Assembly: GCA_002269645.1 (NCBI GenBank)
Contig: NIVC01002780.1
Span: 55,359 to 119,358, forward strand
Length of the DNA: 64,000 nucleotides
Origin: Macrostomum lignano
Taxonomy: Eukaryota
Reading direction: 5' to 3'
This document shows, piece after piece, positions 9,129 through 54,400 of the stretch. The translations under genes were made by a program, and so were the position numbers. Within the stretch, counting starts at the first letter, position 1. The number at the start of each line of letters is the position of its first letter. Under the pieces are notes generated by a model. It saw only the letters and a program-made list of their open reading frames with translations, had not been told where the DNA came from and did no database searches.

Positions 9129-10227
9129 GGGAGCACGAGAATTGCCGCAGACGAATTGCCCGTTCATAGAAAACTGGATTCTACACGCATTCTATAACAC
9201 GGTAAAATATTACGGCTCGATAGACATCGGGAGTTTTTCATGTTATATTGCGGATGTTTTTGGATCACATATGTGATTGCCCGCCTAGATTTGTCCGCGG
9301 GAGATTGATTTGCCCGTCGAGATTTGCCTCCGCAGTGCATTTTGCCCGCGAGCGAATTGCCCGCCGAGTTTTTTTCCGCCGAGGTTTGCCCCGCAATGCT
9401 TTTTCCTGCAGCGCATTTAGCCACGCCAAAAGCTAGATTGTCTGCGTTGCCCCCCCCGCAATGCTATATAGTACTGCGTAAGTCTTTAATAAGATATTTG
9501 TAGGACAAAGCGACTCGGCTGCATGAATTAATAGCTCACCGGTGTACCCATGCATGTATAGAACTCATGAATACCTACAAGAAAAGTTTCGTTTTGAAAC
9601 GTTTTGATCGGGTCTATGTAAATCTCTTTATTACGACTTACTAGCATTGGGGAGGCAATGCAGGCTAAATCTTCCGCGTGGCTAAATGCGCTGCAGGAAA
9701 AAAGCATTGCGGGCAAGCCTCGGCGGGAAAAAAACTCGGCGGGCAATTCGCTCGCGGGCAATTCACTCGCCAGCAAATTGCACTGTGGGCAATTCTCGAC
9801 GGGCAAATCTCGACGGACAAATCTCCTGATCTCGGCGGGAAAAGCATTGGCGGGCAAATCTCGACGGGCAAATCTCGACGGACAAATCTCCTGATCTCGG
9901 CGGGAAAAGCATTGGCGGGCAAATCTCGACGGGCAAATCTCGACGGACAAATCTCCTGATCTCGGCGGGAAAAGCATTGGCGGGCAAATCTCGACGGGCA
10001 AATCTCGACGGACAAATCTCCTGATCTCGGCGGGAAAAGCATTGGCGGGCAAATCTCGACGGGCAAATCTCGACGGACAAATCTCCTGATCTCGGCGGGA
10101 AAAGCATTGGCGGGCAAATCTCGACGGGCAAATCTCGACGGGCAAATCTCGACGGGCAAATCTCGACGGGCAAATCTGCGGGCAGATCTCGGCCGGCAGT
10201 TCGTCTGCGGGCAATTCTCATGGACCC
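9129..10227. mobile_element. Foldback-like non-autonomous DNA transposon with long modular inverted arms
   Basis: The termini are imperfect inverted repeats: GGGAGCACGAGAATTGCCGCAGACGAATTGCCCG at 9129-9162 versus CGGCAGTTCGTCTGCGGGCAATTCTCATGGACCC ending 10227. Internal arm 9342-9424 is the reverse complement of 9678-9762. The arms are built from a 14-bp GGGCAAATCTCGAC module. No clear TSD or transposase. Confidence 0.7.
9801..10140. repeat. 65-bp tandem repeat (~5 copies) in the right arm of the foldback element
   Basis: AAAGCATTGG recurs at 9841, 9906, 9971, 10036 and 10101 (period 65). The unit contains 14-bp GGGCAAATCTCGAC subunits. Confidence 0.9.
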
Positions 10228-10919
10228 TATTTACGACGCACTATTATTATTCGCACTTTTGAACTGTATAAAAATTGTATATATTTACTAGTATATATAA
10301 ATGCTCCCCATTAATCGTTGCTCTGTTGTTGCTACTAACTAAACTAACGTACACGTTTCTAACTGTACCCGAAAGACTCCAGGCTGTTGAGTGGGTCTTG
10401 GGATACATGTTGTGGTACGAGTATGTCTTTGTAAACGAAGATTATTATCCTTGTAACAAAGCCAAAAAATTTCATCTTGAAATCGTAATTAGAATACAAT
10501 AATTTAATGAATCAAATCCTTGACAGGCAATTGTAACTGCAACTACCCTCGTACATGTAAGTCTAGAGAAAAAGTTGCACGAAAAATGTCGAAATCGAAT
10601 GACGACTTTAAATATCGAAAGACTGAGCTTCAGCTTCAGCTTTCGGTACATTTTTAATAAATTCATTTATTTATGTTTATGATTTAGTCTCATATTATTT
10701 AAAATTATTAAGATTATCAATTTTAAGCTAATTTTGAGGAACATTTTTGGGGCCAATGAAGAGCTGCTTATATTGTACTCGCTAGAAGGCTGCCAAAAGC
10801 AGATGCAGACTGACTTTAAATAGCAGAGAGATGCATGGCTCCAAAATAGCAATATAAATAGGTTGTACTTTAACTACTCGGTCAATGCCAAACATCTAGT
10901 AAAAAGCGTATCGAGAAAG

Positions 10920-11412
10920 TCAGGATCTGCTTGTAAGCTGTCTCCTTTTGCGTTTGCCATACCTGCGGGATTGAGACAGTGGTAGAAAATAATTGTTTAT
11001 ACTGTTGTTTAAAGTTTGCTTGAGAAATAATAGCTTTGAATGATGTTCAAATGTCACTTAAGTTTCAGAAATGCGTAGTCTCAGTGTTGGTGGGTACAAG
11101 AAGTTAAAAACACCTATACAGACGTTCAGATTTCGGAAAATTACCCGTGAGCTAATTTATGCACAAATGACCTGCTCACCCAGGCCTGCCTAGAAGAGCC
11201 AGATACTTGTTGAGATTGCGCAAATACAACCGCAAGCTTTCAGGCGACGCGAAGGGTTGCGGAATTTCTGGCTCACCAACACTGCCTCCATTGCTAATGC
11301 TTGCTTCAATAAGCTTCGAAGCAACCGGCCGGCTCAATGCCGAGTTGGAAAATGCGATTCCCAGCTGAAAAATGATGTGCAGAATCCAGTGAAGATTCGA
11401 AATTGCCATCAT
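10920..11412 (-). CDS. NPF: Neuropeptide Y/F (NPY/NPF) family precursor, 2 exons (11412-11180, 10962-10920), 91 aa
   Basis: ATG at 11412 is followed by a hydrophobic signal-like N-terminus and the NPY-fold signature PEIPQPFASPESLRLYLRNLNKYLALLGRP. A GT-AG intron (11179-10963) splits the penultimate peptide codon in phase 2, the position typical of NPF genes. Exon 2 encodes Y-GKR (amidation/cleavage site), then KRRQLTSRS-stop. Confidence 0.9.
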
Positions 11413-11454: not shown

Positions 11455-11496
11455 AACTGCTGAGGCAGTCGCCTGAACTGCTAGACAACATTTATA
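11455..11496 (-). promoter_or_regulatory. Candidate TATA box and initiator of the NPY/NPF gene
   Basis: Minus-strand TATAAA at 11496-11491, with TCAGCAGTT (Inr-like) about 30-35 nt downstream and about 45 nt upstream of the ATG. Confidence 0.5.
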
Positions 11497-14272: not shown

Positions 14273-16213
14273 TTATGAGTCAGCCCTGTGATAAATTGTA
14301 TTCATCAACGACGTCATAGAAGCTGAAAAATTTACGACGACATCCGGACGCCGCAAGGGCTCTGTAAGCTCGTCAACAGCTGCGCCACCCGCCTCAGGTG
14401 CTGCTTCTTCGGGTGTAGCATCTGGTTCGCAGTGTCGCTTAAACTCGTGGATGCAGGTAGCCGAGTGGAAACGATAAAACACCTGCAGCGGAACGGTCAC
14501 TAGCGACAGGACCAGCACTTCGCTCTTGGTATCCTCAATGAAGAACTGACTAAAGCACACCGTGTTGATGATCCATTCGGCAGCGTTCAGCAAAATCAGC
14601 AGGTTAAAAAGAGCTCGACCGTCCATGCCCCGACCGTTCGGGGCTCGAAATTTCCACAACAGGGAGCACTCGATGGCGTAGATTTGCATCAAGCTCTGAT
14701 AAATATTCAACCCGCAGCTGACGCCAAGTAAAATCTCATTGGTCAATTTCAAATTACTTTTTGGGTCGTACTTCTTGCTGGAGCACTTCACAATTGTGCC
14801 CCACAGTTTGTTGAACTCGTGAATGACAATTGCAGTAGCTCCCAACCACAGAAGCGATCGGTCTGTGAGATGGACTGTAGAAATCTGCTTTTTGTTTGCC
14901 TTGTTTAAGTAGTATGGCAACATGCTTGCGCACACGGCACCGAAAAAGTAGAGAAATATTAGTGAGCTTAAAAACACAGAGCGAATAGCGTCCTGACTCT
15001 TGACGTTTTTGTTAAAAAGAACAAAAGTGGATACAAGAAGCGCCAGAGCAGATAAACCAATTCCAATGGCGAAGCTAAAGAAGTATTTACGAATTATAAA
15101 TAACTCTGAAGAATAAGATCTAGCTGAAGTCTCAGGCTTCGAGTTTGACTTCAAAAGGGATCGAAGGTCAACTTCTCGAGCTTGGTCAGCTTCCAAGTCA
15201 GACAGCTCACCGATGTGAATTCGAAGAAAGGTCCCAATGCGTCCTGCATTGGCAACTAGATTGAAAGCCATCAGAGCGCCCATGACGTAGTACTCCACCC
15301 CGAACTGATAAAGCAAATTTGAGACCATTTGAATATTATTCGCCTTGCAAAACGAAGTTCCATTGCCAGCGCCATGTGAATACTCAAAGGCTGGCTGCTT
15401 GCTCTGCTCATCATTTAGAATTTCTCGTAGCTCTATGCCAACATTGAAGAACCAGGATGCAATATTCGTAGCCAGGAGCTGGCATCCACAAAACCAAGTA
15501 GCAGAAAGCTTCCACTGGGCTGAGTGGCGAAAGTGAATAACAAACAGCTTCGTCTGCATGATGATGAATATTGTCAGCAGGGCGCGTCTGAACACATCAG
15601 GCAGCTTTTCTCCAGGTTTAGACATCGAATCAATAATGCCGCACGTGATGTCGATCCCAGACTCCAGGCAGAATGCCGCGGCGAATATAATGAATGTCAA
15701 AATGAACAGCGCTGAAGGGTAGCTTCCAACATGTTTTGGAATTTTTATGTACCGGAGAACATTTTGGAAAATAATGAGTCGGCTCTCTTGCCTGGGATGG
15801 GGCGCAGTGGCCTCGGGAATAGTTCCATCGATGAGCACGGCTTTCTCAATGTAGATTATTGCAGCGATGCCAAGCATCAAATACGTGCACTTGATGAATA
15901 AACAAGCGTATTCGTTTAAACTGAGATTGCCCGTGAGTTTTGTCGAGTTAAACAATTTTCGGGAAGCATTTGGATTCATGGAGAAGTTTGGCTGAAGCAG
16001 GCACCGACTTCGCTGCTCAAGGGATTCGATGTTCATCTCTGTTTCAATCAAGGTGACAATAAATCCTATAGCAATCAAACTCAATGAATACACTAGGCAC
16101 TTTAATTTTACCGAAGGCTCGACCACAATGCTCTTTTGGGATTTATCGCTTCTAGGGCCCGGATGTCTAGCAGAATATGACGATGATTGGAGCAAACTCT
16201 GACGAGATTCCAT
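14273..16213 (-). CDS. OTOP: Otopetrin-family proton channel, single exon, 646 aa
   Basis: Uninterrupted ATG-to-stop ORF with many hydrophobic segments and otopetrin motifs: NIASWFFNVGIE, LLYQFGVEYYVMG (cf. LFPCxIEYSLI), LNAAEWIINT and VPLQVFYRFHSATC (cf. PLxIFYRFHS). Confidence 0.88.
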   Translation of the reverse strand: MESRQSLLQSSSYSARHPGPRSDKSQKSIVVEPSVKLKCLVYSLSLIAIGFIVTLIETEMNIESLEQRSRCLLQPNFSMNPNASRKLFNSTKLTGNLSLNEYACLFIKCTYLMLGIAAIIYIEKAVLIDGTIPEATAPHPRQESRLIIFQNVLRYIKIPKHVGSYPSALFILTFIIFAAAFCLESGIDITCGIIDSMSKPGEKLPDVFRRALLTIFIIMQTKLFVIHFRHSAQWKLSATWFCGCQLLATNIASWFFNVGIELREILNDEQSKQPAFEYSHGAGNGTSFCKANNIQMVSNLLYQFGVEYYVMGALMAFNLVANAGRIGTFLRIHIGELSDLEADQAREVDLRSLLKSNSKPETSARSYSSELFIIRKYFFSFAIGIGLSALALLVSTFVLFNKNVKSQDAIRSVFLSSLIFLYFFGAVCASMLPYYLNKANKKQISTVHLTDRSLLWLGATAIVIHEFNKLWGTIVKCSSKKYDPKSNLKLTNEILLGVSCGLNIYQSLMQIYAIECSLLWKFRAPNGRGMDGRALFNLLILLNAAEWIINTVCFSQFFIEDTKSEVLVLSLVTVPLQVFYRFHSATCIHEFKRHCEPDATPEEAAPEAGGAAVDELTEPLRRPDVVVNFSASMTSLMNTIYHRADS

Positions 16214-18671
16214 ATGAGCTTGCTGTAAATACGATAATTGACTTCATTAAGTTGACTTTGCAGAGAGATGCTTGCCCAGGACAATTAGTTCTTCGTTTTC
16301 TTAAATTAAAAGCTTTTCCGTCCAGACGTTCTTGTGTTTATATATTGTCTGCTTTACAAACTGCAGCCACTGCAACAGCAACCTCAACTTGGCTATTCAG
16401 CATTCCCAGCAGTAAACCAACAGGATGTGAACCAATTGAATGTATGTTGTCGGACGAGCTGCACACTTTCCCGCACTCGTGAAAACCACTTAGAATTAAA
16501 ATGTAAACAACATAAACCAGATATGCCCGAGCATCCGGTTAGCTGCAGACTGCAGTGTACCTGTGCCCGCCAGTCTGACATGCTTCAAAAAGGCGACTTA
16601 GTTTAACACACATAATGCATGAAAAAATGCTACCAAGACCACGAGTGCCACATCCCAAATTTGAATTTGATGAGCGAGCCCAAGTTATTGAAGCTTCTAA
16701 AGCTTTCTTCTACTGACCCTTTCGCCCTGTCTCAATACATTCTCCAGGCTGGCTGTGTCTCTTCTACTTTAATTAAACAAATGAAAGCTGATTTGCATAA
16801 TCAGTCACTGCAACCCGGCCTGTCAGGACGGGGCTTTTCAGTGGCCGAATTGCTCAGTTCCTCACTTCTTTACCGCTGCATTAGGGCGGTCATTCTTATA
16901 GCCAGCTCTCATCCTCGGTCCACATCCTCATGAGGAAGCCGGGGTGGGCCGCATTCTGCTAGCCTGAAACTGTGCAATTAAAGATAAGCCGTGATTAGGA
17001 GGGGGTTTCGTCCCGGGCCTCAACCACAGGCCCTCTCCCTGCCAGCGGGTCTCAGGCAGCTCGTTTCTCCCTAGGGCAACTCTATAGCGACAAACTGACA
17101 CCGGGAGTTTGAGCCGAATGGCAATAAAGAGAAGCTAAATGCTACTTCCTGGAGCCCGCATCAATCTTTCCGCGCTAATCGCATCCGCAACTTGATTAAC
17201 TCAGCGCCCGGAGCCTCCTGCGTGCTTGGACAGCAGGAGGGCACTTGACCGGCACTAATTTAAAGATAATATTTGACACAATGGCCCGGACAGAAGGAAA
17301 CGTGGCCACACGAAGGTTGATAATGACCTCCTTAATTAGCCTTCTTCCGTTGCTCGACCCTCCAGCCTCGTTGTAAAGCTGCTCTTTGGCTCACGCAGCT
17401 TTCCCATTTGTTCTCCGGCTACCAGTACAGTGTCAGCAGCTTCTGTGCCCCAATGTCCGTCCGGCTCTCAGGACTCACACGCCCCCCCCCCCTGCTGCTC
17501 CAACGAATGGCAGCGTTTCCCTTCCCGTCAGTGAGGATTTGAGCTGCCAACCTCGCTTTCCTCGAGCTGGAAACACAATCGGATTCGAACTCGCGCTCAG
17601 TTTGGATCCCTGCGAATCGAACTTGCTTTTCTCTGCTGCTACCGTAACGCTGATCGATAGATCAAGCAAGAACAGGGACAAAAAGCAAACAGTTCCAGAA
17701 CAGCTCCGGTATGTATGTGGTCGATTATTTTTGTTCCTGTTCTCATTTAAAACAGAAAAAAAATAACAAAGCAAATTCAAAGCAGATTCGAATCCATGAA
17801 ATTGTTTTACTAACCGACTGGCCTAAAGCAATTTCTAATTATCTCTGTTCTATAAAATTTTCACAAAAGGGCTTCTGCTTCAAGCATCTGCTTTCAGTTT
17901 CTGCTTCTTTTTGCTCCAGCTCGGGTAGGGACAAGCATGGTAGAATTCTCAACAGCCTTCACCTTACCCAGGCAGGGAGCTCTCGCCACGCTTCTGTTTA
18001 ACCAGTTGAAAGCTCCTACCCATCTCCTCTGCCTTCCCTGCCTTCTGCTTTCAACCGCCTCTGCCTCCCGGCCTCACCTTGGAAAATGCGCCACCTGACT
18101 ATTGCAGCCTCATCGATTTCTTCTCTCTACCGCGTGTGTCTCGCTCACGGCGAACCCCCCCCCCTCCCTTTCCTGGATGCATTCTCTCTGGGGGAGAGAG
18201 AAATGAAGAGTAGGAACTGGAGCTGGAGTAGGAACTGGAACCCTAGCTTGATGCAGCGCTCAGTTTTGCTTGCATTTACCCCTCCTTCCAGCATCCTCGC
18301 GGGAAAAAATGAGTTGCAGTGTAGGGATAGGGCAGGGTGAAACAAAACAGACCATTCTAACGATCCATTGGACGGAAGCGCTCACCTGCTGAGTCGCCAG
18401 CCATTGTTTTACTTCTTGCTTTTCTCTCCCCTACCAAGCCTCCCCTCTCGCCTCTTCCTCTTCTCCCCTTCTGTTAATACAGCAGTTGTCCCCCTACCGC
18501 CGCCTGCCTTACGCACAACTCCGAGGCCCAAGCGAGCAAACAGGCAGACTATATATAATACTCGTCACCAGCTGCTGAAATACTCGCCTCTCTCCTATCG
18601 TCAGTTCGCAGCATCCAACAGGCAGAGAATTCCTAGTCAACAACTGACAGATCAACCCATTGAAGGAAAGC

Positions 18672-36130
<17,459 letters not shown>

Positions 36131-38911: not shown

Positions 38912-39028
38912 TCACTTTGCCGGCCGTCTGGCCGCAGTTCCTGCCCCGCCGGCTCCCGATGGTCGTTCGCGCTCGTTTTTGTACTCGGATTCGACCTTCT
39001 TCTGAATCTCCTCCCATGACGGCACTTG
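38912..39028 (-). CDS. IFT80: IFT80 exon 3 (C-terminal helix)
   Basis: Encodes QVPSWEEIQKKVESEYKNERERP...-stop, matching the IFT80 xIDWEKIKAKIExE tail. Acceptor ttttgcag. Confidence 0.85.
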   Translation of the reverse strand, partial: QVPSWEEIQKKVESEYKNERERPSGAGGAGTAARRPAK

Positions 39029-41733
39029 CTGCAAAATGGGGGTTGGGAGGTTATATATATAGCTCGTATATGTATCCCGCAACCAGCACTGAGGGTAATT
39101 CGGCCGATTCCACTGACTCCTAAGCACATTACAAGCGCGCCAATACTGTGTGTACGCAGACATGTACTCATGCACACGCTCACTCAAGGTGTACAGCGGC
39201 CCAAATTTCTACTCGTCAGGGATGTACACACTCTGCGCCTTGGGGTTGGCCCTCATGGCTTTGAATTGCACGAATTCACATTGAATTCGGATAATCTACT
39301 CTTCTCTTGCCGTCAAAACGGATGCTTTCACAATTTTAAGCGAAAACGCAATTTTTCACGTATCCTACCTCGTCGGACAGCTGCTTGAACTTTGGCAGCG
39401 TCTCTTTTCGTCCGACCCGCTCTAGAAATTGTCTTCGATAAGCTAGCACAACGTCCACATGGACACGGTGCTTCTGAGCCAGGTCCAGTGCCCGCTCCCA
39501 GCTGTAGAGGCCCAGGTGCATCATAACTGCACGGAACAGCAGCCCAGCCTGCACCAACAACCCCTCTGCATCCTGGACATTGCCGGACAGTAGCAGCATC
39601 TCGGCATTGCAGGCCTCCTTCAGCGGCAGTGACCGGATGTACTGGATGTACTCGACCTTGTCCGGCTCGGCGATGGCTGCGAACGCCGTTTCGGCGGTAT
39701 CCAAATCTCGCTTAGCGATGCTCATGGCGGCCAGCACCGCCCAGAGCATCTCGTCGTCAACGAAATGGCACAGCTTGATGGCCTCGCGCCACTTGCCAAC
39801 GGATGTGTAACTGTGCAGAGTGCACGGATACGGCGAGATGCTCATCGTCACCGGCGTGCCGTCCGATTTGCGCACCGTGATGGATCGGCCCAGGAAGCCG
39901 ATCAGCTGCGGACTCTTGCCAAACTCCATGCCAGCGTCGCGCTCGAATACGGTTCGCCGAACTAAAGCGGCGTCCTGCAACGCAGCCGCAGGGTAATAGT
40001 ACACCAGCAGCTTGCTACCCGCCAAGCAGGCTAGCATGTTGGCTTCGCTGTTCCAGCACATGGATTCCACCATGGTGCCGATCTTGACAATACGCCGCTG
40101 TCCACCGTATGTGCGGACCTGAGAAAATTTGTTACAGAACATGAGCTTTCACATATGAGCCTAAAAGTAAACAGGATAAGTAGTCTTTTTGAAGAGGTCA
40201 TGCAACAATCTATGTCGTTAAACTTCATACTAGGCTCACCTGAGTGATGAAAAGGTCTCGATTGCGATCGATTATGGCGAGCTTGCGGTCAGTGGCTGGC
40301 CCGGATTGGTCCAAAGCGACTTCAGCCACCTCCGATTTGTGCATGATCGGCTTGCCGTCGCCAACCAGCCGGCCTGTGGCGGTGTCGAATGCGTACACAG
40401 CCTTCTCGTCGGACTTGTCAGCGAGCACAACAGTATCCGGACTAATTGAGCAAGTGAGGGGACTAAGTGTATCCGCGCGCATATCCTGATACCGTGGCGA
40501 GCAAATCAGCCGGCCTTCGTATGAGTACACATGCACCGATCCTTGGTCAACCAAGAGAAACTGCTTTTCGCTCATGTCAATCATAGTAACGCAGCCGCCT
40601 TTCAGATCAAATATCGTTGGGGTGTTCCAGTTGCGAGTCCCGTAGACGAAGCACTGGCTGGCGGTGCACACAACCAGATGGTTCCAGTTCAGACTAGCCT
40701 TCACGATACGGTCTCGAAAATCTAGCTTGTCCTTGGCATCGTCCAACACGTTACGAACCGAGATAGACTTTTCGCTTTCAATAACGGCCTCGATGTTTTT
40801 CCACTCGAGGCGTCGCCCAACCACCTGACAGAAGACGACGCGGCCGTTGCCACCAGCCGCAACCGCTTGGGTGCTGTCGCTGCTCCAGCACACGTTGAAG
40901 ACTGAGCCGCAGTCCAGCTTTTCCAAACTGTAGGACCAACCGCAGCGGTCGCACAGGCGAATGGAGTTGAAGCTGCCGACTAGAAACAGCTCTCCATCTG
41001 GCGACCAGCTGACAGAAGTTATTGGGTAGTCAGAGATAGGCGGGCTAGAATACACACATCTGCCGAATGAATCCCACAGCTTGTAACGGCAGTCTTCTGC
41101 CCCAGAAACGATAAGGTTGTTGATTGGATTCCAGTCCACTTTCAGTACCAGATTTTCATGAGCCTTCCAGGCGGTGGGTCGAGCATTTGGTTGTAGTGAC
41201 TTGAGCACAAGTTGCTTGCCTAGGCTGTACACTACCTGGTCAGAGTTAGCACTCCAGGAGCCAGAGTAGACTGGATAAGCATTCTGTGATAGCACAGAGC
41301 GAAGCATTCCGTTGCGTGACCAGATCTTCACGGCACCGTCCTCGCCACAGCTGAGCAGCATACTGCCGTCGTAGCTCCAGCGAACTGACAGAACGGCACC
41401 CGTGTGTCCGTCGATGACTTTCTCCACGCGGCCCGCCCTAGACATGATGTACAGCTTGCCATCCGTGGAACCCAACGCAAAAACCTCTGAGCCTGTGACC
41501 TTCTTGGACCCGCCGCCGCCGCCGCCGGATGTGACCGGCAGCCAGTGCATGTCCGTGGGGAAAACACCATCAGCCATCTTTGGTAGGGCCTGCGATTCCG
41601 ATGAATTCAGGTTCCATCGGATTAGCTGATGGTCGTCACCAGCAGAGATCACCTCCTCTGGACTGGCAAAGCCGACAGCGCTGACTAGGTCAGTGTGCTT
41701 CTGGTCTTTTGAAAGTTGTGTCTTAAGCTTCAT
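38912..41733 (-). CDS. IFT80: Intraflagellar transport protein 80 (WD40 IFT-B subunit), 3 exons (41733-40240, 40118-39369, 39028-38912), ~786 aa
   Basis: N-terminus MKLKTQLSKDQKHTDLVSAVGF matches IFT80 MRLK..L.KE.KH. It has WD40 repeats (HTGAVLSVRWSYDGSMLLSCGEDGAVKIWSR, WKAHENLVLKVDWN) and the C-terminal motifs LWAVLAAM and SWERALDLAQKHRVHVDVVLAYR. GT-AG phase-0 introns at 40239-40119 and 39368-39029. The ORF-track start at 41745 is TTG; the true ATG is at 41733. Confidence 0.95.
39369..40118 (-). CDS. IFT80: IFT80 exon 2 (250 codons)
   Basis: Encodes VRTYGGQRRIVKIGTMV...FKQLSDE. Donor GAG|GTAGGA. Confidence 0.92.
40240..41733 (-). CDS. IFT80: IFT80 exon 1 (498 codons)
   Basis: WD40 propellers, donor CAG|GTGAGC. 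Confidence 0.93.
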
Positions 41734-43783
41734 AGCAGCATGCAATAGAGTAGAGAGTTAGTTAAAGAGCATGAATACTTGATACGCGAGTTAACATATT
41801 TTCTTAAACCCCATTTTAAAAGTAAAAAATTCAGTCCGTCCCGAATAAGCTTGGATAAAAAAATTATTTTAAGCCAGGTTTGACTACCTAGATCATTATT
41901 GATAATTAAAGCACGTTTATCGAGATTAAACGAGTAAAGTATGAAAAGCGAAATGCTAGTCGGGTAATTATGAAAACTAAATAAGTGACAGAAAAAAGAT
42001 TCTAGTATGGAATCGTAAAAGAAGCAAAAACATTAAAATATGAGCTATAAATTTATGGTGTGCTTCCCACTCGATTTTTTGTGATAAAGAGAGTAAACCT
42101 ATCAAGAACCACACATGAACAATGAGCATGCATATTGAGAATGGATATCACTTTAAAAAAATTGGTTGGTGATTGGATATATATAAGGATCAGGTCATGG
42201 CTTAAAAGTACACAAACCTAAACAAAGGAACAAAATTCAAAGTATGCATGTATTAAAATGTTATTGAAAATATATCTATAGCAGTTTTTATTTTAAATCT
42301 TAGCCAAACCAGATTATTAGAAGCATCCAACGGAAGATGCTTCTAATAATTTAGATATTGGTTTTGCCTTTGTATGTGGCAGTCTCGAATAAACCTATCA
42401 ATTCAACACCAGTAGTCAGTAGAGAAAGATTTCTAAATTTTTATTTTTAATTTAGATAATTACAAATGAATCACTAGCTACATAGATACATAAGCATAAA
42501 CATTTAAAATTTCCTATGATTTTCTATTTCCTATAAAGAATGCATAGAAACTATTTTATTTATGAAAAAATGGACTCCTATTGATATATTATACGTTTAA
42601 AATTGCATGATTTTAAGTGTGTCTGCCACAATTTTTGCATGGGTTTTATTATTAACTTACGATTATGAATGCGTTAAACTAGTCTAAGATATTGACTAAT
42701 GTGCAATAGGCTGAAAAATACTCCTATTTTTTAGTTTAAATAGTCCAGGTTGCCCTCTATTAATACGATTGTAATTGTATAAAAAGTTTATCATCAGTGA
42801 CCAAGTGTTGATTGAAGATTTTTTATTATTACAGTTCAGTGAGATACTTTAATAAGAAATTTCGGTAAAAAAGGAGTAGGAGGTGAAATACATGGCTTAA
42901 TCTTATGACTAATCGGATGGAACGATAGTTTTGTTACATGATAAAGTTTCACTTAACTTATGATAGCTCATGACATTATAAATATACTAAAGTATTTCAA
43001 TTCAAACCAAACGTTACTGATGTAAATAGTAGACATTAAAACAAAAGTGAAAATATTAACTCGAAATTTAAAGGCAAAAAATAGCAATATTATCTCTTTC
43101 AAAGAGCTTTTTCAATGAGAAGAAGTGAATTTTTGTGTATTTATTTGAGATTTTATCTGATCAGCTGTTTATATAATTTTAAAAAGTCCAGTTATTTATC
43201 ATCGATAAACTGTGATTAAACTTTGTTGTCCGCTTTTGTGCAAGTGACGACAAGTCGACATGTAGACACGAGTTTAAGAAATACTGCAATCAACGATTTG
43301 TGCGAGCAGATGTGACTGTATAAATTCTAAATTTTAGTAGATACTACAAAAGTATGTTCTTACTCACCTCGAGTCAGCCTTTAGCCAGCTGCCCTGCCTC
43401 TAGAGTATAGAATTAGATTATTCTTTAAATTAAAGTTTAATAGACCACTATTGTATATTCTCTTTATAGGAAAATTTCTTAAAATATATTTTGCTATCAA
43501 CAAAGTCAATTTTACAAAGTTTTGCTCTTTTTTCATAACAAGGCCTAACTAAATTTTTTGTAGGCCTAGTATATCAGAGTAGGCCTAACACTAACTAACA
43601 TAGTAGTCCTAATAACATAATCATAGGCGATAGGCCCAAGTCAACCATGTCAACCATATTAGGCTGAGTAGCGCCTATTATACTTTAGCCTTTTTATGCT
43701 TTTGGCAAAGATGGTTCTAGCAATGACCTTGTAACTTGTAAGTTCTTGGCCTAAGACTAAGAGCAACAAATATGGCAATGGCT

Positions 43784-44152
43784 AGAGTTCTGGCACCGGA
43801 ACCCATTTTCTAATGGCTATGGATCCGGCAGTGCCATTATAATATAGATGGAACATTATATTTTTCTTTCTACAGGTGGCTGATATTGAGATTTTGTTCT
43901 AGATTAAAATTTAAGACTATATGATAAGATTCGGGATGAGATGCTTCTAATATTCAGACTTCTTAAGATATGTTTTTAGGGCATAGTTCTAGTTTACTGC
44001 GTTAAATTATTTTGCCCTCTATTCAAGGGTAGGGGGGTTGGAATATAATGAAGTAAACTAGAACTATGCCGTTTTTAGCAGTCTTTATATGCTTCTATAC
44101 GGCACTGCTGGATCCCTAGCTATTAGAAAACAGGTTCTGGTGCCGGAACTCT
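43784..44152. mobile_element. Decayed MITE with 53-bp terminal inverted repeats
   Basis: 43784-43836 versus the reverse complement of 44100-44152: 45/53 identical. A second internal 17-bp inverted repeat (GCATAGTTCTAGTTTAC / GTAAACTAGAACTATGC) is present. Confidence 0.75.
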
Positions 44153-45164
44153 GACATTACCGACAAATATAGACAAGGCTACTCAAACAAATTTACTTTT
44201 AACTTTAGAATTAAATTAAATTATAGAGCTTTTCTTCTCTTTACTACATGGTAGAAGAATTTTTAACAAATAATACAACTTTAATTCTGGTCTACTTACC
44301 ATATTTAGAAAAGTGTCATAATTATACTAGAAAAGATATTCTTAAAACCCTTTTTGACAATTGTAAAAAAAGTGCACATTTAATTATTTTTCAACTTAAA
44401 TGAACACCAATGCATATTTATTATGATGCGAGACATTTAATAACAAAACAGTTCAACAACATTGCACATCTTATTGGGTAGACAATGATATAATTTAATA
44501 GGCTTTAGTGCTAATCTAGTAGAGCATCCAACCAAATTGCTTTGTGGGATAAAGCTTGTGCCACATGTACTCTTCTAAATATATCTCAGAGTTGTTGCTG
44601 TGTGCTATGTATGGCCTGTAGCTTTGCCTTGCAGTATACATGTGCAACAGTTGGCCAAGTCGGCCGATCTAGCTGACTAATTTGGTGGCCAACCAAGGTA
44701 AGTCACAAAAATGCCCACCCAAATAAATACCCAAGTAGTACCCAAATTTTGGAGGTTGTGCATATATGCCTGCTTCAGTCGCTGCTCTGCTATGCCCTGA
44801 GCATGCACTACCCTAATACTGATACTATGTTGACTAGGGACCTGATGACTTGCACTGGTGTTCTTGCACTCAGTTGCACTATCTATAAATGTTGTCAGAT
44901 GTTACTTGGCCACTGCCTAAGAAGCCACAGCCGCGGCAAGCAAAATCTCAAAGCGCTGACTCTCTTGCATCAGCTCACTGAGTGCCTGCGCCATGGCCAA
45001 GGCCAAACTGTGATGCTAAATGATACATTTCTGACTGACTTGCAGGCCATTGGGCTTAGCCCCTAGTCTACCATGACTTGCCCCTCTTGGTTGTTCTGCA
45101 AATGCATTTGTGCAAAGTCTAGCTAGATCTCTTTTTGTCTATGCTACTCTGTGCATTGCTATAT

Positions 45165-45564
45165 ATGCACGGGCCTGCTAACTGTCTGTGATGATAGCTT
45201 CCAATGAGTATATATTGCTATACGATAAGTAGCAATGTAGCAGCCATATGGTTATTGATAGACAAATATACACTTAGGTGCACTATGCTTAATCATACCT
45301 AGAACCCACTATGCCTTGCAGTATGCCCATATCCTTTCAATCAGGTTAGTATGCACTGTTAGGTCCTAGGGATACACAAAGGCCAGCTGATAGTTCATGA
45401 CTACATAGTTAGGCAGCTATGCATAGGCCTGCTAACCATCTGTGATGATAGCTTCCAATGAGTATATATTGCTATATGATAAGTAACAATGTAGCAGCCA
45501 TATGGTTATTGATAGACAAATATACACTTAGGTGCACTATGCTCAATCATACCTAGAACCCACT
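45165..45564. repeat. Local direct duplication (~146 bp, offset 254)
   Basis: 45165-45310 is repeated at 45419-45564 with a few substitutions. Confidence 0.9.
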
Positions 45565-48500
45565 GACCAGGCTCATGCTGTCCCTGGTGGTACTTGTGAT
45601 AAAAGAATTATGACTTGTCAACTTCTATGTCATGTTTAGGACCACCAAGCTATATTTGGTGGTCAATGAGATACTAGGCACATGTCTCAAATGAAGTTCT
45701 ACCAATCCACAGCAGTAGACCTTGACACCTTGTTTTGCTAGGCACACTTGCTGCTTGGCATCTATTGCCCACTAAAAAAGATCAGGTTAACAATCTATTG
45801 GAGCTGCAGAAAACTTGCTTCAAAGAAGGAGCTCTTGTATATAGAGGCCTATAGTTTTGGACATGGTAGTTAGGACATGCCTGTGCAAAACCATCTATGA
45901 AGTGGGCACCCTCACATTGTTGTAGGCATATAGTAGGGGCACTAAGGCAGAATGAGCATGTGCACTAATTGGCTAGTAGGTGGTACATAGCCAGTTAATG
46001 ATGTCCTGTGGTGTGGCTGTTGGTTGGCTATCTTAAGCATTGTAAAATCCATATTATAGAGCTCCTAGGCCTGATATACCTACCTTAGGGGTAAAATGAA
46101 GGTTTGTGCAAGTGATATTTAGCCATCTAGTCACTGCAAGCAATGATCAAGGAAAATAAATTGAAACTTACTAAAATTAATGTTTGTAACAATTACACAG
46201 TTATAATTAAAAATCAGGGATTGCCCAATCTAAAACTATTATTATTATAACTAAACTGAATAGTTTTGTATTATCAAATGTGTTTCCCATCACAAAAATA
46301 TGCTTTGGTATTCATTTAAGTTGAAAAATAATTAAATGTGCACTTTTTAAATTGCCCCCCTTTTTGTATATCTAGGCTAAGGTCTATAGGCTATATTACT
46401 TAGGCCCTATTCCAAACTTCTTAGAAAATTTATATACTATAAATAAATAATATATATATATATAAATAAAATAAATAAATATATATATATAAGTTCAACT
46501 TTTTATATTAATAGTGGTTTCTAAATTATTTGTTATACTATTAAAATAAATAATAAATGTAGGGATCCTAGAATAGTCATTATAATAATTTTGTTATGTT
46601 TAAATAGAAAGGAATATTTTTAGTTACTTTATTATTTGGCTAATTAGAAAGCAAAAATTATGGTTATAGATTAGTTTGTTAATTGGCCTATTATATGATA
46701 TATTATATGTTCTTCTTAGTCTTCTATTTTCTTTTTCTCTCTGTCTAACTTTGCAATCTTGTCTTTTATAGCAGCAGCAATAGCATATGCTTGCTCTTAA
46801 GCCAGATAAGCTACTGTATCCTATATTGCTTTTAAATGCTTCTTACATTCTAAACTTGCTTATTAAACTAACTGATGTTCATGATATCCTTGATCTTCAA
46901 TATATTGATAGAAACAATGTAAATAAGGCAGAGCAAATAAATTGCCATTAGACTATTTAGTAATAGGTCCTATAGCCAATTTCTATCTTTGCACAAGATT
47001 TTGTATTTAGTTTGCTTAACTTGTGCTCAATATTAATATGCCATAGGAGAAAAAGAGTCTTCCAAGCCAATTTTTTAGAACAGTTCTATATGTCTTGGCT
47101 TGTTATTCAATTTTTGGATCAAGTGCTAGTAGAGCTAAATAATCTCAACTCCAATTGTAATATATCAGTCCTATTTATATAGCAGGCCATGAAACATAAT
47201 TGCCTCTCAAGACACTTTCATTTGAATCTGTCACTACCAAATGGGTTGGCAAATTTTGCAGCTTGCAATACCCACAACTTCATTAGCAAGTAACAGAACA
47301 AGGCCACTTGTAGAGTTGAGTAGAACAAATTAGTTAAAGAAAAGTGAACCTTAGAAAATTGAAATAAAAGCCAACCTTTTAGTTATTGCATGTAATTTTT
47401 CTAATTGTGATATCTTTGCCAAATAGCTATTCTGAGCATATGGTATTCAAGTTTTATGCTTCTTTGCCTTTTCAATATACTTCTATTAAATGGAGCTACT
47501 AGCCACAGTGTGAATCAATGGCAATGCAAAGTTTTTTAATTTTAACTTTTAACTTTTAAAAAGTTGAAAATTTGTGACTCAGCTGACTTAAAAAGCTAGA
47601 GTGGAGTTAGGTAGAGCTTATAAACCCTAAGTACAACATTATATCTAGGGCTTTTAGATATTGGAAAACTTGCTGAACTTTAGGCTTCCTCTTTTCAATC
47701 TCAAAAAGGCAGCAAAGCTGCTAGCAGCAGTTGTATAACTGAATATAGCAATTCACTATGTCTATAATTTATAACTATTCTTTATACACCTTAGCAACTA
47801 CAAAGGTGTCTTCCTGAGCTTTTTCCTAGGTTTTACAAAAGTCATTAGCAGTATTGGCATAGCAAAAATAGTTATAGACTTGAGAAAGACTGGTATCAAA
47901 TAGTGCCTTATTTTATCCAGAAAGTGCCAATATTTTTCAAAGTAGTGCCAGTTTTGGGTATTTTATAAAGCACTATGTTGGCATTAGCCACCAAAATTTG
48001 GCTTTGGTATAATGCCAAATGTCTTTTACAGATAGTGCCAATGTTGAATATATAAGGATGAGGAACTATATGAGGAACTAGTTTGGCACTAGATGCCAGA
48101 TTTAGGCACTTTTGAAATGCTACATAGTGCTTAATTTTTAGTAAAAGGTGTAGTATATTGTTTAGCATTCAGTATATAATAGTATTGCAAGTGAATTAAA
48201 TTTGTAGCTCCTAGTATACAAAGCTTGTCAAAAAGGACAAAAGCAATGTCCTCTAGTCTTTAGGCCTAAAAGGAAATATCAGTTAGCATGTTTCCTCACT
48301 TGATATTTAGTGTACTCCTTAGTTTCCTTATTTCTCATTTTAGGAACAATCTTCTTTTGATTTCCTTACTTTATAGGGTTTATACAATTGAAATATTAGT
48401 TTATATACTTTTTGGACTCATATAGCCATTAATTGTTTCATGAACTGAAATAATATTAGAACTAAATAGATTTCTTCTTTTTTTTCTCTTATCTCTCTAA

Positions 48501-50239
48501 TTTAGTTATTATATATTACTAAGCAGACTTTATTGTTGAAAGAAACTTAAAAAATCATTCAATATACAATTATTTGCCAAACAAGAAAAGTGTGAATTTT
48601 AATTAGAATAAAATTGTCATACAAATATAATTTTACTACTAACAAAAGAAATACATTGTTTTTAAACAATAAAAAGAATAAAAAAAGCTTTTTAAACTTC
48701 AATGCATAGAGCAAAATGCTAAGTAAAAAAGCTTTATAAATTTTAATGCATTAAAGCAACTGCTAAGTATAAAAGCTTTGGACTATCAGGTGAACTTTGT
48801 CTTTTAGGTTTGGCTTCTTTGGCTTCCTGTAAATCAGGCCCATTTCTAGGCTGATAATGAATAGATGCTAAGCATAGAGGATATTGTAGACTATTAGGGC
48901 CACTTTTATAGGATTGTATAATTATATTGGGAAATTCTAAAAAAGTTTAGTTTGGATAGGTTAAAACCTTATAGTACAACTTTTGAAACAAACAATTAAT
49001 AGGTAGATAATATTTTAATGCAAAAAAGTTTGCTTTTGAGGCAAGAAAGTAGGTCAAACAGCCAAAAGGAAAGTTGTCATAATGAAAGTGCTGATTATAC
49101 AGAATTACACAAAGCTGCATTGAAATTTTTAATTGAATTTCAGCATTATTTAAATGAGTAAAAATGAGCTAAACTGAGCCTTAGCTCAGATAACATTGAA
49201 ATTTATGGTATTTTAAAAGATTCTTTTAAATAAAAAAATAATGGAAATGTTTAAAATTGATTAAAAAATTCCTAACAAATTTAATTAATTATTAAAAAAA
49301 TTCAAGTACTTATTTGTATGTTAAAACAACTTTAAGATTAAAATAAACTACAAGCTAAGTATTATAATAGTTGATCAAATTGTTTGGTAATTTCATTAGC
49401 AACATTGTTAAATATTAACAAGGCATGAGCATTTGTTAGTACATTAGTAGTATATTCTAGAGGTTGGACAAGTAGAAAATTTTGGTTGGACATGAAATTT
49501 TATGAAATTTTCAAAGTTGGGCATGATTGTGATTATGAATGTGAATTTCTCATTCATTTATTATGCAGACATGTATTATGAGCTTGTAAGTTACAAGCGT
49601 AGAAAGTAGCAAAATGAGCAAAGGAACCATTATATATTAGATACTCAGTAATGCTATCAAGTCAACAAATATATTACTGCTTTATACATTCGTGTTCATG
49701 CTTTTATTTTAGTAAATCAAATAGAAACATTACAATTTGAATAAAAAAGTTAAGCAGAAACTCACAAGCTCATGAATTTTATTTAAAGGAAATGGTCATG
49801 AATTCACAAAATTGTGATCATATCCAACCCCTAGTATATGCTTGACAACTTAATGTAAATGTTGTTACAACTTTAATAGTAGCAACAAAAGATAACAAAT
49901 AATATCTTTGAACTTTAGAGATAAATATTGAATGTTTGTTACATTTAAAAAAAGCTTTCTAAAAATGATTTGTAAAAACCAAAATAAAAGTAACTCAACT
50001 ATTTTTGTAAAAATCTAGATAGATGCATTTTGCACATGCATTTTGGGACTGTGGATTGTGGAGTTTAGGAGTTAGGAAGTTAAGAAATTTGTTGAGCTAA
50101 AGGGCTATTGAGTTTAGTGTTGTTATTGTTGCATGTGCATCTATAAACACCTAGTATTTAATTTTGAGCATATTATTATTTTGTTTTGTTTTAACATTCA
50201 GTGTTTTTGGGCACTACATGTCTATGCAACTAACTTTGC

Positions 50240-51413: not shown

Positions 51414-54400
51414 ATGGCAAGGAAAAGTAAGAAATCTGCTCGAGGAAAGAAGCAATCAGCAAAGTCATCATCAAGGTAAGTCAATTTCGGAAGCCTATTT
51501 TTATTGTCTAATTAAATAATTTACAGTTAAGAATCGTTTATTGCGTAAATCTTGTAAATTGGTTTGATATGTATGCAATACATTATGTTAGACATTAATA
51601 TACATCTATAAGTTCGGAAAAATTGCAGTTTTTAATTAGCTTTGCATTTCTGCTTTTCAGACGTAGCACTTCGAGTGCAGCGAGCAGCTCAATCGCCAGT
51701 TCGGTAAGTCACTCACTCGTCACACTTAGTTTCACTTTTTATTCTTAGATTAGAGCTTCCGAAGTTGACTGTAAAGTTTAGGGATTGAGAGGAGTTTAGG
51801 GACTGTGGAGTTTAGGGACTGTGGAGTTTAGGGACTGTGGAGTTTAGGGACTGTTGAGTTTAGGGATTGTGGAGTTTAGGGACTGTGGAGTTTAGTGACT
51901 GTGGAGTTTAGGGACTGTGGAGTTTAGTGACTGTGGAGTTTAGGGACTGTGGAGTTTAGTGACTGTGGAGTTTAGGGACTGTGGAGTTTAGGGACTGTGG
52001 AGTTTAGGGACTGTGGAGTTTAGGGACTGTGGAGTTTAGGGACTGTGGAGTTTAGGGACTGTGGAGTTTAGGGACTGTTGAGTTTAGGGATTGTAGAGTT
52101 TAGGGACTGTGGAGTTTAGGGACTGTGGAGTTTAGGGACTGTGGAGTTTAGGGACTGTGGAGTTTAGGGACTGTGGAGTTTAGGGACTGTGGAGTTTAGG
52201 GACTGTGGAGTTTAGGGACTGTGGAGTTTAGGGACTGTGGAGTTTAGGGACTGTGGAGTTTAGGGATTTTAGAGTTTAGGGACTGTGGAGTTTACGGACT
52301 GTGGAGTTTAGTGACTGTGGAGTTTACGGACTGTGGAGTTTAGGGACTGGAGTTTACGGACTGTGGAGTTTACGGACTGTGGAGTTTACGGACTGTGGAG
52401 TTTAGTGACTGTGGAGTTTAGGGACTGTGGAGTTTAGTGACTGTGGAGTTTAGGGATTGTGGAGTTTAGGGACTGTGGAGTTTAGGGACTGTGGAGTTTA
52501 GGGACTGTGGAGTTTAGTGACTGTGGAGTTTAGTGACTGTGGAGTTTAGGGATTGTGGAGTTTAGGGACTGTGGAGTTTAGGGACTGTTGAGTTTAGTGA
52601 CTGTGGAGTTTAGGGATTGTGGAGTTTAGGGATTGTGGAGTTTAGGGACTGTGGAGTTTAGTGACTGTGGAGTTTAGGGACTGTGGAGTTTAGGGATTGT
52701 GGAGTTTAGGGACTGTGGAGTTTAGGGACTGTGAAGTTTAGTGACTGTGGAGTTTAGGGACTGTGGAGTTTAGGGACTGTGGAGTTTAGGGACTGTTGAG
52801 TTTAGTGACTGTGGAGTTTAGGGATTGTGGAGTTTAGGGATTGTGGAGTTTAGGGACTGTGGAGTTTAGTGACTGTGGAGTTTAGGGACTGTGGAGTTTA
52901 GGGATTGTGGAGTTTAGGGACTGTGGAGTTTAGGGACTGTGAAGTTTAGTGACTGTGGAGTTTAGGGACTGTGGAGTTTACGGACTGTGGAGTTTACGGA
53001 CTGTGAAGTTTAGTGACTGTGGAGTTTACGGACTGTGGAGTTTAGGGAATGTGGAGTTTAGTGACTGTGGAGTTTACGGACTGTGAAGTTTAGTGACTGT
53101 GGAGTTTAGGGACTGTGGAGTTTAGTGACTGTGGAGTTTAGTGACTGTGGAGTTTAGGGACTGTGGAGTTTAGGGACTGTGGAGTTTAGTGACTGTGGAG
53201 TTTAGGGACTGTGGAGTTTAGGGACTGTGGAGTTTAGAGATTAGGAAGTTTATAAATTCGTGAAGTTGAAGGCCTGTGGAGTTTGGTGTTGTTAAAAGTG
53301 CCTCAAGAAGAGTCCAGACTAATAACCGCGATTGCTGCAGGCCGCCGATCGCCAGTCGCGCGGCAGCAGGAAGTCTCCGCACCGCCGGGACAGCTCTGAG
53401 ACGCAGCAGCGGCGGCAGTCTCAGTCAAAAGCCAAGCGGCATAGCCAGCCGTCGCGGTCTCAATCGGCCGTTGCGGCGTCGCGAAAGCGAAAAATTAGCA
53501 AATCGGAGCCTCTGTTGGAGGATAGTGAAAGCAGCAACAGCAGCAGCAGAAGCAGAGCCAATAGCCGGTCACAGCCGGCTGCCACCAGAGTGTTGCGCTC
53601 CGCTTCCAGGCGTCAAGCCCGCGAACAGGCATCGCTGGCGTCTCCCCAGCAGCAGCAGCCGCAGCCGCAGCCTAGCGAGCAGCAGGCTAACAGTTCGGAC
53701 TCGGCTCGTCAGGCCAGTTTGAGGTTTGTTTTCTGTTAATGCATTTGCTTTGCCTCCTGCTGCTTTTGTCTGCCTCTCCTGTTCTTTCACTGTTCCTGTC
53801 TTTTCTTTGTCTGTCTGCTTCCGCCTCTGTCTGCCTCTGACTGACCGTCTATCTGTCCTGTGTCTGACTGTCTGTCTATCTATCCTGTGTCTGACTGACT
53901 GTCTATCTGTCCTGTGTCTGACTGTCTGTCTATCTGTCCTGTGTCTGACTGTCTGTCTATCTGTCCTGTGTCTGACTGACTGTCTATCTGTCCTGTGTCT
54001 GACTGTCTGTCTATCTGTCCTGTGTCTGACTGACTGTCTATCTGTCCTGTGTCTGACTGTCTGTCTATCTGTCCTGTGTCTGACTGTCTGCCTATCTGTC
54101 CTGTGTCTGACTGTCTGTCTATCTGTCCTGTGTCTGACTGTCTGTCTATCTCTCCTGTGTCTGACTGTCTGTCTATCTCTCCTGTGTCTGACTGTCTGTC
54201 TATCTCTCCTGTGTCTGACTGTCTGTCTATCTCTCCTGTGTCTGACTGACCGTCTATCTGTCCTGTGTCTGACTGACCGTCTATCTGTCCTGTGTCTTAC
54301 TGTCTGTCTATCTGTCCTGTGTCTGACTGACTGTCTATCTCTCCTGTGTCTGACTGACCGTCTATCTGTCCTGTGTCTGACTGTCTATCTATCTCTCCTG

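What the first reader, a model, noticed from the sequence alone, without database searches (positions are those of the whole stretch)
10950..11200. NPY/NPF precursor with Gly in place of the near-invariant penultimate Arg (GRPGY-amide)
The split codon is GG|G (Gly), giving ...YLALLGRPGY-GKR. NPY/NPF peptides end R-x-R-F/Y-amide, and this Arg is established as important for NPY-receptor activation. The signal peptide, PP-fold residues, conserved intron, amidation site and TATA/Inr all look intact. It could therefore be a functional ligand with altered receptor specificity, an antagonist, or a very recent AGG>GGG loss-of-function allele.
Basis: partly seen in the sequence, partly recalled or inferred. 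Interest (0 to 1): 0.7.

Follow-up and report, generated by a model that had tools for sequence, protein, structure and literature searches.

The report
Flatworm NPF gene with Gly35
This is a real, unannotated neuropeptide F/Y gene of the flatworm Macrostomum lignano. In this genome copy a glycine replaces the normally invariant arginine next to the C-terminal tyrosine-amide, and these tools cannot tell whether that is a recent tolerated defect or a retuned hormone.

Summary
On the minus strand, a two-exon gene (CDS 11412..11180 and 10962..10920, with a 217-nt GT-AG phase-2 intron) encodes a 91-aa precursor. It ends ...YLALLGRPGY-GKR, and the split codon is GG|G (Gly).

The precursor matches Pfam Hormone_3 (NPY/PP family) at 41.6 bits, above the cut-off of 28.7. 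Its only hits among 1.84 billion representative proteins are NPF/NPY precursors.

The window is M. lignano contig NIVC01002780.1. The gene is not in the protein collection searched (which holds this assembly's NCBI proteins).

The Arg really is near-invariant:
- 37 of 37 NPF loci pulled from metagenomes have AG or CG at this codon. Most have the same phase-2 intron.
- All ten planarian NPY-family precursors I read keep RPR.
- All nine peptide copies of M. lignano's other NPF gene keep RPRF.

Everything else in the peptide is canonical: P5, P8, Y20, Y27, R33, P34, Y36 and Gly-Lys-Arg. It is the most complete PP-fold match among the flatworm sequences compared.

My best reading (0.45) is a recent single-base change in one copy of a recently duplicated genome, tolerated through redundancy. 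A retained ligand with changed specificity is a serious rival (0.3).

The homeologous copy, reads, transcripts and orthologues would decide this, but I could not reach them. The claimed Inr was not found. Interest is moderate.

The parts
11491..11496 (-). Candidate TATA box (TATAAA), 84 nt upstream of the ATG.
   Evidence: Pattern scan and sequence. No Inr consensus lies between it and the ATG.
11180..11412 (-). Exon 1 coding part. It encodes the signal peptide, an N-terminal extension, and NPF residues up to Pro34 plus the first two bases (GG) of codon 35.
   Evidence: ORF 11176..11412; splice model; Pfam match.
11338..11412 (-). Predicted signal peptide (about residues 1-22/25: MMAISNLHWILHIIFQLGIAFS/NSA).
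   Evidence: Kyte-Doolittle 9-residue mean hydropathy is 1.8-2.3 over residues 7-14, followed by a small-residue stretch. The cleavage site is inferred; no signal-peptide predictor was run.
11180..11181 (-). First two bases (GG) of the split codon 35. With G at 10962 the codon reads GGG = Gly, where the family has AG|N or CG|N = Arg.
   Evidence: comparison set.
10963..11179 (-). Phase-2 intron, 217 nt, GTGAGC...CCGCAG, at the family's conserved position.
   Evidence: The same position and phase occur in 33 of 37 metagenome NPF loci and in 10 of 11 planarian npy genes (PMC2953531).
10920..10962 (-). Exon 2 coding part. It supplies the third base of codon 35, Tyr36, Gly (amide donor), Lys-Arg and further basic residues, a short C-terminal peptide, and the TGA stop (10922-10920).
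10666..10671 (-). Candidate polyadenylation signal AATAAA, about 250 nt after the stop.

Best explanation
This is a genuine neuropeptide F/Y prohormone gene of Macrostomum lignano that is missing from the protein collection searched here. It has the ancestral architecture: one peptide per precursor and a phase-2 intron in codon 35.

Inferred processing, none of it observed:
- The signal peptide is removed.
- A prohormone convertase cuts after the Lys-Arg that follows Gly37, and the basic residues are trimmed.
- Amidation uses that Gly, giving a long peptide that ends ...LLGRPGY-NH2.

The Gly comes from a single-base change (AGG or CGG to GGG) at window 11181. I judge the change to be evolutionarily recent, because every other conserved feature of the peptide is still canonical.

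The residue replaced is the one that salt-bridges the conserved Asp6.59 of vertebrate NPY receptors. The product is therefore expected to be a very weak agonist, or inactive, at the canonical NPF receptor.

The change is probably tolerated because the genome is recently duplicated. A homeologous contig exists. A second NPF gene, with three RPRF-amide peptides per precursor, is present in three identical copies.
For: Shown:
- Gene model and Gly codon.
- Family assignment (41.6 bits against a cut-off of 28.7; only NPF/NPY precursors hit).
- Organism and contig (the window is 100% identical to NIVC01002780.1).
- A homeologous contig, NIVC01000798.1, is 94.5-97.8% identical over 23 kb of the window. 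The IFT80 proteins are 769/772 identical.
- The second NPF gene, BOX15_Mlig009822, is an intronless three-peptide precursor. Its three annotated copies (g1-g3; two seen on different contigs) are identical across all nine RPRF peptides.
- Arg at this codon in 37 of 37 metagenome NPF loci. The search pattern stopped at ..RP, so it was blind to this codon.
- RPR in all ten planarian NPY-family precursors that I read.
- The window peptide keeps P5, P8, Y20, Y27, R33, P34, Y36 and G-K-R. It is 60% identical to a nemertean pro-NPY-like peptide but only 36% identical to M. lignano's own RPRF peptides.
- It aligns to Pfam positions 3-36, whereas planarian NPY-5, planarian NPY-11 and Mlig009822 align only from position 9.
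- Changing the one residue back to Arg raises the Pfam score from 44.6 to 52.0 bits.
- Ala substitution of R33 or R35 lowers binding more than 170-fold at Y1, Y2 and Y4. R35 salt-bridges D6.59 in all three structures (PMC9067930).

Inferred: that the change is recent, that the peptide is weak or inactive, and that redundancy explains its tolerance.
Against: - No read, transcript, homeologue or orthologue was seen, so neither the age of the change nor whether it is copy-specific has been measured.
- Homeologous coding sequences in this genome are very well conserved: 3/772 differences in IFT80 and 1/137 in the other NPF. A radical change at the most critical residue of one copy is therefore a rare event a priori.
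- A gene that is intact in every other respect fits a selected, functional Gly variant equally well.
- Receptor pharmacology is extrapolated from vertebrate receptors. No flatworm receptor was examined.
Confidence: 0.45

Rival explanations
1. The Gly is an older, fixed and selected change. The ancestral-type NPF gene was freed by the rise of the three-peptide RPRF-amide gene. It now encodes a functional RPGY-amide ligand with changed receptor specificity: a co-evolved receptor paralogue, a biased or partial agonist, or (less likely) a competitive antagonist.
For: - The gene is intact in every testable respect: ORF, hydrophobic N-terminus, GT-AG intron, Gly-Lys-Arg, aromatic C-terminus.
- An RPRF-amide source exists elsewhere in the genome in three identical copies, which could have released this gene from its original role.
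- Flatworm NPY families do diversify. Planarians have 11 paralogues, one of them atypical (RPRL-amide) and still expressed in the pharynx (PMC2953531).
- The a-priori rate of copy-specific amino-acid change between homeologues is low.
Against: - Only one residue of the receptor-contacting C-terminus has changed. G32, R33, P34 and Y36-amide are untouched, and the whole PP-fold is unusually conservative. That is not what long evolution on a new receptor would predict.
- None of about 55 family members examined tolerates a non-Arg here.
- In vertebrate receptors, loss of R35 abolishes binding (PMC9067930), which argues against an antagonist.
Confidence: 0.3
2. The G at 11181 is not the true germline base of the line. 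It is a consensus or polishing error, or a rare variant captured by the assembly, and the real gene encodes ...GRPRY-amide.
For: - The anomaly rests on a single base in a single long-read assembly contig.
- Restoring Arg gives a perfectly canonical Y-type flatworm NPF, like planarian NPY-5, -7 and -10, with a higher family score.
Against: - By general knowledge, errors in long-read consensus are mostly insertions and deletions in homopolymers. Any indel in the GGG run destroys the Y-G-K-R reading instead of restoring Arg (sequence).
- A substitution error landing exactly on this base is very improbable.
- No reads were available to test this.
Confidence: 0.08
3. The locus is a silent, dying duplicate: it is not transcribed, or is transcribed but never processed. 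The Gly would be the first visible lesion of a pseudogene.
For: - The gene is absent from the protein collection, both by exact look-up and by HMMER search.
- No initiator motif was found.
- The genome is recently duplicated, so one copy can be lost.
Against: - The absence is readily explained by the precursor's length of 91 aa, below the 100-aa minimum commonly used when ORFs are called from transcripts (inference).
- There are no frameshifts, no stops, no splice-site damage and no loss of the processing site. A TATA box and a polyadenylation signal are in place.
Confidence: 0.12

Closest known systems
Invertebrate neuropeptide F (lophotrochozoan long NPF, e.g. Tubulanus pro-NPY-like XP_074653141, Urechis NPF-1, Moniezia and planarian NPF)
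   Same: - 36-residue PP-fold core with P5, P8, Y20, Y27, R33 and P34.
- Gly-Lys-Arg processing site.
- One peptide per precursor.
- Phase-2 intron in codon 35.
- 60% identity to the Tubulanus peptide.
   Different: - Gly instead of Arg at position 35.
- Tyr rather than Phe at position 36.
- About 20 extra residues between the signal peptide and the core, with no dibasic site.
Schmidtea mediterranea NPY superfamily (npy-1 to npy-11; Collins et al. 2010, PMC2953531)
   Same: - It belongs to a multi-member flatworm NPY/NPF family that includes Tyr-ending members (NPY-5, -7, -9, -10).
- Same intron position.
- npy-11 shows that an atypical C-terminus (RPRL) can persist in an expressed gene.
   Different: - Every planarian precursor that I read keeps Arg35. 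The atypical one changes residue 36, not 35.
- The planarian peptides align to the Pfam model only from position 9, whereas the window peptide aligns from position 3.
M. lignano BOX15_Mlig009822 g1/g2/g3 ('Neuropeptide F' in UniRef)
   Same: Same species and same Pfam family (96 bits over three repeats). It is the likely redundant source of canonical ligand.
   Different: - Intronless.
- Three shorter tandem peptides, each ending SRPRF-GKR.
- Only 36% identical to the window peptide.
- Annotated, unlike the window gene.
Vertebrate NPY / PYY / PP and their Y receptors
   Same: Same fold, same gene structure, same C-terminal Tyr-amide. R35 contacts D6.59 in Y1, Y2 and Y4 (PMC9067930).
   Different: The vertebrate NPY and PP whose receptor complexes were solved carry R35 (PMC9067930). 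Here it is Gly. Whether the flatworm receptor uses the same contact was not tested.

Membership tests
NPY/NPF (pancreatic-polypeptide fold) peptide family, Pfam PF00159 | Sequence match to the family profile above the curated threshold | tested here: met
   41.6 bits (precursor) and 44.6 bits (core) against a cut-off of 28.7, covering profile positions 3-36 of 36. The only HMMER hits in 1.84e9 proteins are NPF/NPY precursors.
NPY/NPF (pancreatic-polypeptide fold) peptide family, Pfam PF00159 | C-terminal Arg-X-Arg-Phe/Tyr-amide motif | tested here: not met
   The motif reads Arg-Pro-Gly-Tyr. Arg35 is present in 37 of 37 metagenome loci, in all ten planarian precursors read, and in all database hits.
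NPY/NPF (pancreatic-polypeptide fold) peptide family, Pfam PF00159 | Phase-2 intron inside the codon of residue 35 | tested here: met
   GG|GTGAGC...CAG|G in the window. The same position and phase occur in 33 of 37 metagenome loci and in 10 of 11 planarian npy genes and vertebrate NPY genes (PMC2953531).
NPY/NPF (pancreatic-polypeptide fold) peptide family, Pfam PF00159 | Gly amide donor followed by a dibasic cleavage site directly after the aromatic residue | tested here: met
   Tyr-Gly-Lys-Arg-Lys-Arg-Arg in exon 2.
NPY/NPF (pancreatic-polypeptide fold) peptide family, Pfam PF00159 | PP-fold residues (Pro5, Pro8, Tyr20, Tyr27) | tested here: met
   With Tyr36 as anchor, the core SVGEPEIPQPFASPESLRLYLRNLNKYLALLGRPGY has P5, P8, Y20 and Y27. 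The three-dimensional fold was not modelled.
NPY/NPF (pancreatic-polypeptide fold) peptide family, Pfam PF00159 | Secretory precursor with an N-terminal signal peptide | tested here: inconclusive
   There is a hydrophobic core at residues 7-21 followed by small residues. No dedicated predictor was available.
NPY/NPF (pancreatic-polypeptide fold) peptide family, Pfam PF00159 | Expressed, processed and amidated peptide that activates an NPY/NPF-type GPCR | not testable with these tools
   No reads, transcripts, peptidomics or receptor data were reachable. The precursor is absent from the protein collection.

The most novel reading that the evidence does not exclude
M. lignano keeps, in all its genome copies, an ancestral-type NPF gene whose product ends in Gly-Tyr-amide. 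This peptide would be a working signal for a receptor that no longer needs the Arg35-Asp6.59 contact, or a natural modulator of the RPRF-amide system. It would be the first natural NPY/NPF-family ligand without the penultimate Arg.
Probability: 0.27. Interest if true: 0.62.

Novelty: new variant of a known kind. Interest (0 to 1): 0.38.

Why it matters
The penultimate Arg of NPY/NPF peptides is among the most conserved ligand residues in bilaterian neuropeptide signalling. In vertebrates it makes the key salt bridge to the receptor.

If a natural, expressed family member lacks it, that would be a ready-made experiment on how a peptide-receptor pair can drift. It would also show how gene and genome duplication (here a three-peptide RPRF gene plus a recent whole-genome duplication) release an ancient hormone gene from constraint. 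M. lignano is a transgenic, RNAi-tractable flatworm, so the question can be tested.

If the change proves to be a copy-specific lesion, the finding is ordinary. It still adds an unannotated, ancestral-type NPF gene to the species' neuropeptide list. It also shows that short prohormones are missed by the current annotation.

Tried and rejected
1. Alternative splicing that would restore Arg. The only option is a GC donor at GGCAG|gcctgg, giving ...LLGRY-GKR. I rejected it because the canonical GTGAGC donor 8 nt downstream is far stronger and sits at the family's conserved position.

2. Indel error in the GGG run. One G fewer or one G more both lose the Y-G-K-R reading (sequence).

3. A second copy in the window. 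tblastn found none.

4. Close relatives in the big protein collections. There are none: the word-index search was empty, the best HMMER hit is 43% identical, and exact look-ups of the exon-1 ORF, the Gly precursor and the Arg version were all absent.

5. Close relatives in JGI metagenomes. There are none. The profile scan gave 37 distant NPF loci, which I used as the comparison set.

6. Reaching the homeologous NPF copy.
   - I first mis-assigned the window to NIVC01000798.1 and corrected this. The window is NIVC01002780.1 and the other contig is the homeologue.
   - No gene on record was found within 10 kb of the NPF gene. Eight ORFs were tested in all (six within 3 kb of it) and none is on record.
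   - I rebuilt the neighbouring PTBP-like gene as a 13-exon, 554-aa model. It has the same length as the annotated product but is not the same sequence.

7. Literature.
   - 'GRPGY' gave no relevant paper.
   - No M. lignano neuropeptide catalogue is in the held library.
   - McVeigh et al. 2009 is not held.

8. Rfam and tRNA scans of the window were empty.

Full report
**What is in the sequence**

The feature lies on the minus strand.
- An ORF starts at ATG 11412 and runs to a TGA formed by a splice donor (11176..11412, 78 aa).
- Exon 1 ends ...CTA GGC AGG CCT GG at 11180.
- The intron (11179..10963, 217 nt) begins GTGAGC and ends CCGCAG.
- Exon 2 begins at 10962 with G TAT GGC AAA CGC and stops at TGA 10922-10920.
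- The spliced product is 91 aa: MMAISNLHWILHIIFQLGIAFSNSALSRPVASKLIEASISNGGSVGEPEIPQPFASPESLRLYLRNLNKYLALLGRPGYGKRKRRQLTSRS.

Flanking signals:
- A TATAAA sits at 11496-11491.
- An AATAAA sits at 10671-10666.

**Is it really an NPY/NPF gene?**

Yes.
- Pfam Hormone_3 (PF00159) matches at E=1.2e-10 and 41.6 bits, against a gathering score of 28.7. The match covers profile positions 3-36 of 36.
- A full HMMER pass over 1.84 billion representative proteins found six hits, all NPF/NPY precursors. They are krill NPF, M. lignano BOX15_Mlig009822, Tubulanus pro-NPY-like, Urechis NPF-1 and two unnamed metagenome proteins.
- Numbered from the C-terminal Tyr as residue 36, the core SVGEPEIPQPFASPESLRLYLRNLNKYLALLGRPGY carries P5, P8, Y20, Y27, R33 and P34. 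Gly-Lys-Arg follows it.
- The N-terminus has a hydrophobic core at residues 7-21 followed by small residues. This fits a signal peptide, but no dedicated predictor was run.

**Where it comes from**

- The IFT80 ORF in the window identifies the organism as Macrostomum lignano.
- I first placed the window on contig NIVC01000798.1 and then corrected this. The window is 100% identical to NIVC01002780.1 (141 kb; window position = record position minus 55,358).
- NIVC01000798.1 is a homeologous contig. It is 94.5-97.8% identical in DNA over about 23 kb of the window, and its IFT80 protein is 769/772 identical.
- The NPF precursor is not in the 15-billion-protein collection, either exactly or as a relative. 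It is therefore unannotated.
- A 91-aa product falls below the usual 100-aa minimum for ORFs called from transcripts. That would explain the absence, but it is my inference.

**How unusual is the Gly?**

I collected NPF-like loci from JGI metagenomes with a pattern that ends at ...Arg-Pro, so it cannot bias the next codon.
- In 37 of 37 loci the next codon begins AG or CG (Arg).
- In 33 of them GT follows directly after the second base. That is the same phase-2 intron; the other four loci read on without an intron at that point.

Other comparisons agree.
- All ten planarian NPY-superfamily precursors that I read keep Arg-Pro-Arg. This includes the 'atypical' NPY-11, which changes residue 36 to Leu (Collins et al. 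2010, PMC2953531).
- All six database hits keep Arg.
- Putting Arg back raises the Pfam score of the core from 44.6 to 52.0 bits, so this one column is worth 7.4 bits.

On the receptor side, Tang et al. 2022 (PMC9067930) report two things.
- Ala substitution of R33 or R35 lowers binding more than 170-fold at Y1, Y2 and Y4.
- R35 salt-bridges D6.59 in all three receptor structures.

**Context inside the same genome**

M. lignano has another NPF gene, BOX15_Mlig009822.
- It is intronless and encodes three tandem peptides, each ending SRPRF-GKR.
- Its three genomic copies are identical over the entire mature region: nine of nine peptides are RPRF.

The window peptide is only 36% identical to those peptides. 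It is 60% identical to the nemertean peptide and 46-54% identical to the annelid-like peptides.

It aligns to the Pfam model from position 3. The planarian peptides and the Mlig009822 peptides align only from position 9.

So the window gene is the conservative, ancestral-type NPF gene of this species: one peptide, a full polyproline N-terminus and the conserved intron. It is also the one that has lost Arg35.

**Artefact checks**

- An indel in the GGG run cannot give Arg. Both alternatives lose the Tyr-Gly-Lys-Arg reading (sequence).
- The only other splice option is a GC donor that would give ...LLGRY-GKR. It is much weaker than the canonical GTGAGC donor at the conserved position.
- Only a substitution at 11181 could restore Arg, and substitution errors are uncommon in long-read consensus (general knowledge).
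- There is no second copy in the window.
- No Rfam family or tRNA overlaps the region.

**Most likely mechanism**

Shown: an intact prohormone gene with a Gly codon at position 35.

Inferred processing: signal-peptide removal, convertase cleavage after Lys-Arg, trimming, and amidation, giving ...LLGRPGY-NH2.

Inferred function: a very weak or inactive ligand at the canonical NPF receptor.

Two readings remain open.
- (a) The change is recent and possibly specific to this homeologue. It is tolerated because the other homeologue and the three-copy RPRF gene supply ligand.
- (b) The change is older, fixed and selected, giving a ligand with altered specificity.

For (a): the rest of the receptor-contacting C-terminus (G32, R33, P34, Y36-amide, G-K-R) and the whole fold are untouched. 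No other family member tolerates a non-Arg at this position.

For (b): the gene is intact, and amino-acid differences between homeologues are rare in this genome (3/772 and 1/137).

I put (a) at 0.45, (b) at 0.30, a silent dying copy at 0.12 and a base-call artefact at 0.08.

An antagonist role is the least likely version of (b), because loss of R35 removes binding in the receptors studied.

**What could not be done**

The decisive data are the homeologous copy, reads, spliced transcripts and Macrostomum orthologues. None was reachable.
- No gene on record was found within the 10-kb reach of the locus tool.
- Eight window ORFs are not on record.
- My 13-exon, 554-aa model of the neighbouring PTBP-like gene has the annotated length but is not the annotated sequence.
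- The held literature has no M. lignano neuropeptide catalogue and no mention of an RPGY-amide peptide.

**Verdict**

The C-terminal motif, a defining feature of the family, is not met. I therefore rate it a new variant of a known kind, with its functional status unknown. Interest is moderate (0.38). It would rise to about 0.6 if the Gly proves to be fixed and the peptide is expressed.

Noticed in passing
window 14273-16213 (-): A single-exon 646-aa ORF matches Pfam Otopetrin (PF03189, E=5.6e-11), 2.9 kb upstream of the NPF gene on the same strand. It is not in the protein collection, either exactly or by homology, so it appears to be unannotated.
   Followed up: partly
locus L002 3001-3492 (NIVC01000624.1) and proteins P0122, P0128, P0129: The annotated M. 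lignano 'NPF' (BOX15_Mlig009822 g1-g3) is an intronless precursor with three tandem peptides ending SRPRF-GKR. The three genomic copies are identical across the mature region. A krill NPF precursor (P0121) also carries three tandem copies.
   Followed up: partly
window 22180-36130 (+): A PTBP-like four-RRM gene. My 13-exon model gives 554 aa, the length of the annotated product, yet is not an exact match to it. At least one exon boundary therefore differs from the annotation. Candidates are the 27-nt alternative acceptor at 30457/30484 and the 75-nt linker exon at 32080-32154.
   Followed up: partly
window 38912-41730 (-): IFT80 (BOX15_Mlig022764g1) is built from very large exons. Its homeologue on NIVC01000798.1 differs by 3 of 772 residues, while the flanking DNA is only 94.5-97.8% identical.
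   Followed up: yes
window 20088-21080 and 22704-23714: Two roughly 1-kb tetranucleotide arrays, (AGAC)n and its complement (CTGT)n, lie in inverted orientation on either side of the first two PTBP-like exons.
   Followed up: no
window 34488-35312; 51767-53237; 53836-55438; 59391-59982; 60365-61765; 9787-10150: Long minisatellites with periods of 44, 16, 27, 32, 23 and 65 bp. They account for the extreme GC and AT skews at 52-62 kb and for many long spurious ORFs.
   Followed up: no
window 42000-50000: An AT-rich block (GC 27-30%, against about 45-50% elsewhere) lies next to IFT80. Its content was not examined.
   Followed up: no
window 18660-19043 (+): An ORF with long poly-Gln and poly-Ala runs ([21 protein letters not shown]...) and no Pfam match. 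It may be an exon of an unannotated gene or just a repeat-derived ORF.
   Followed up: no
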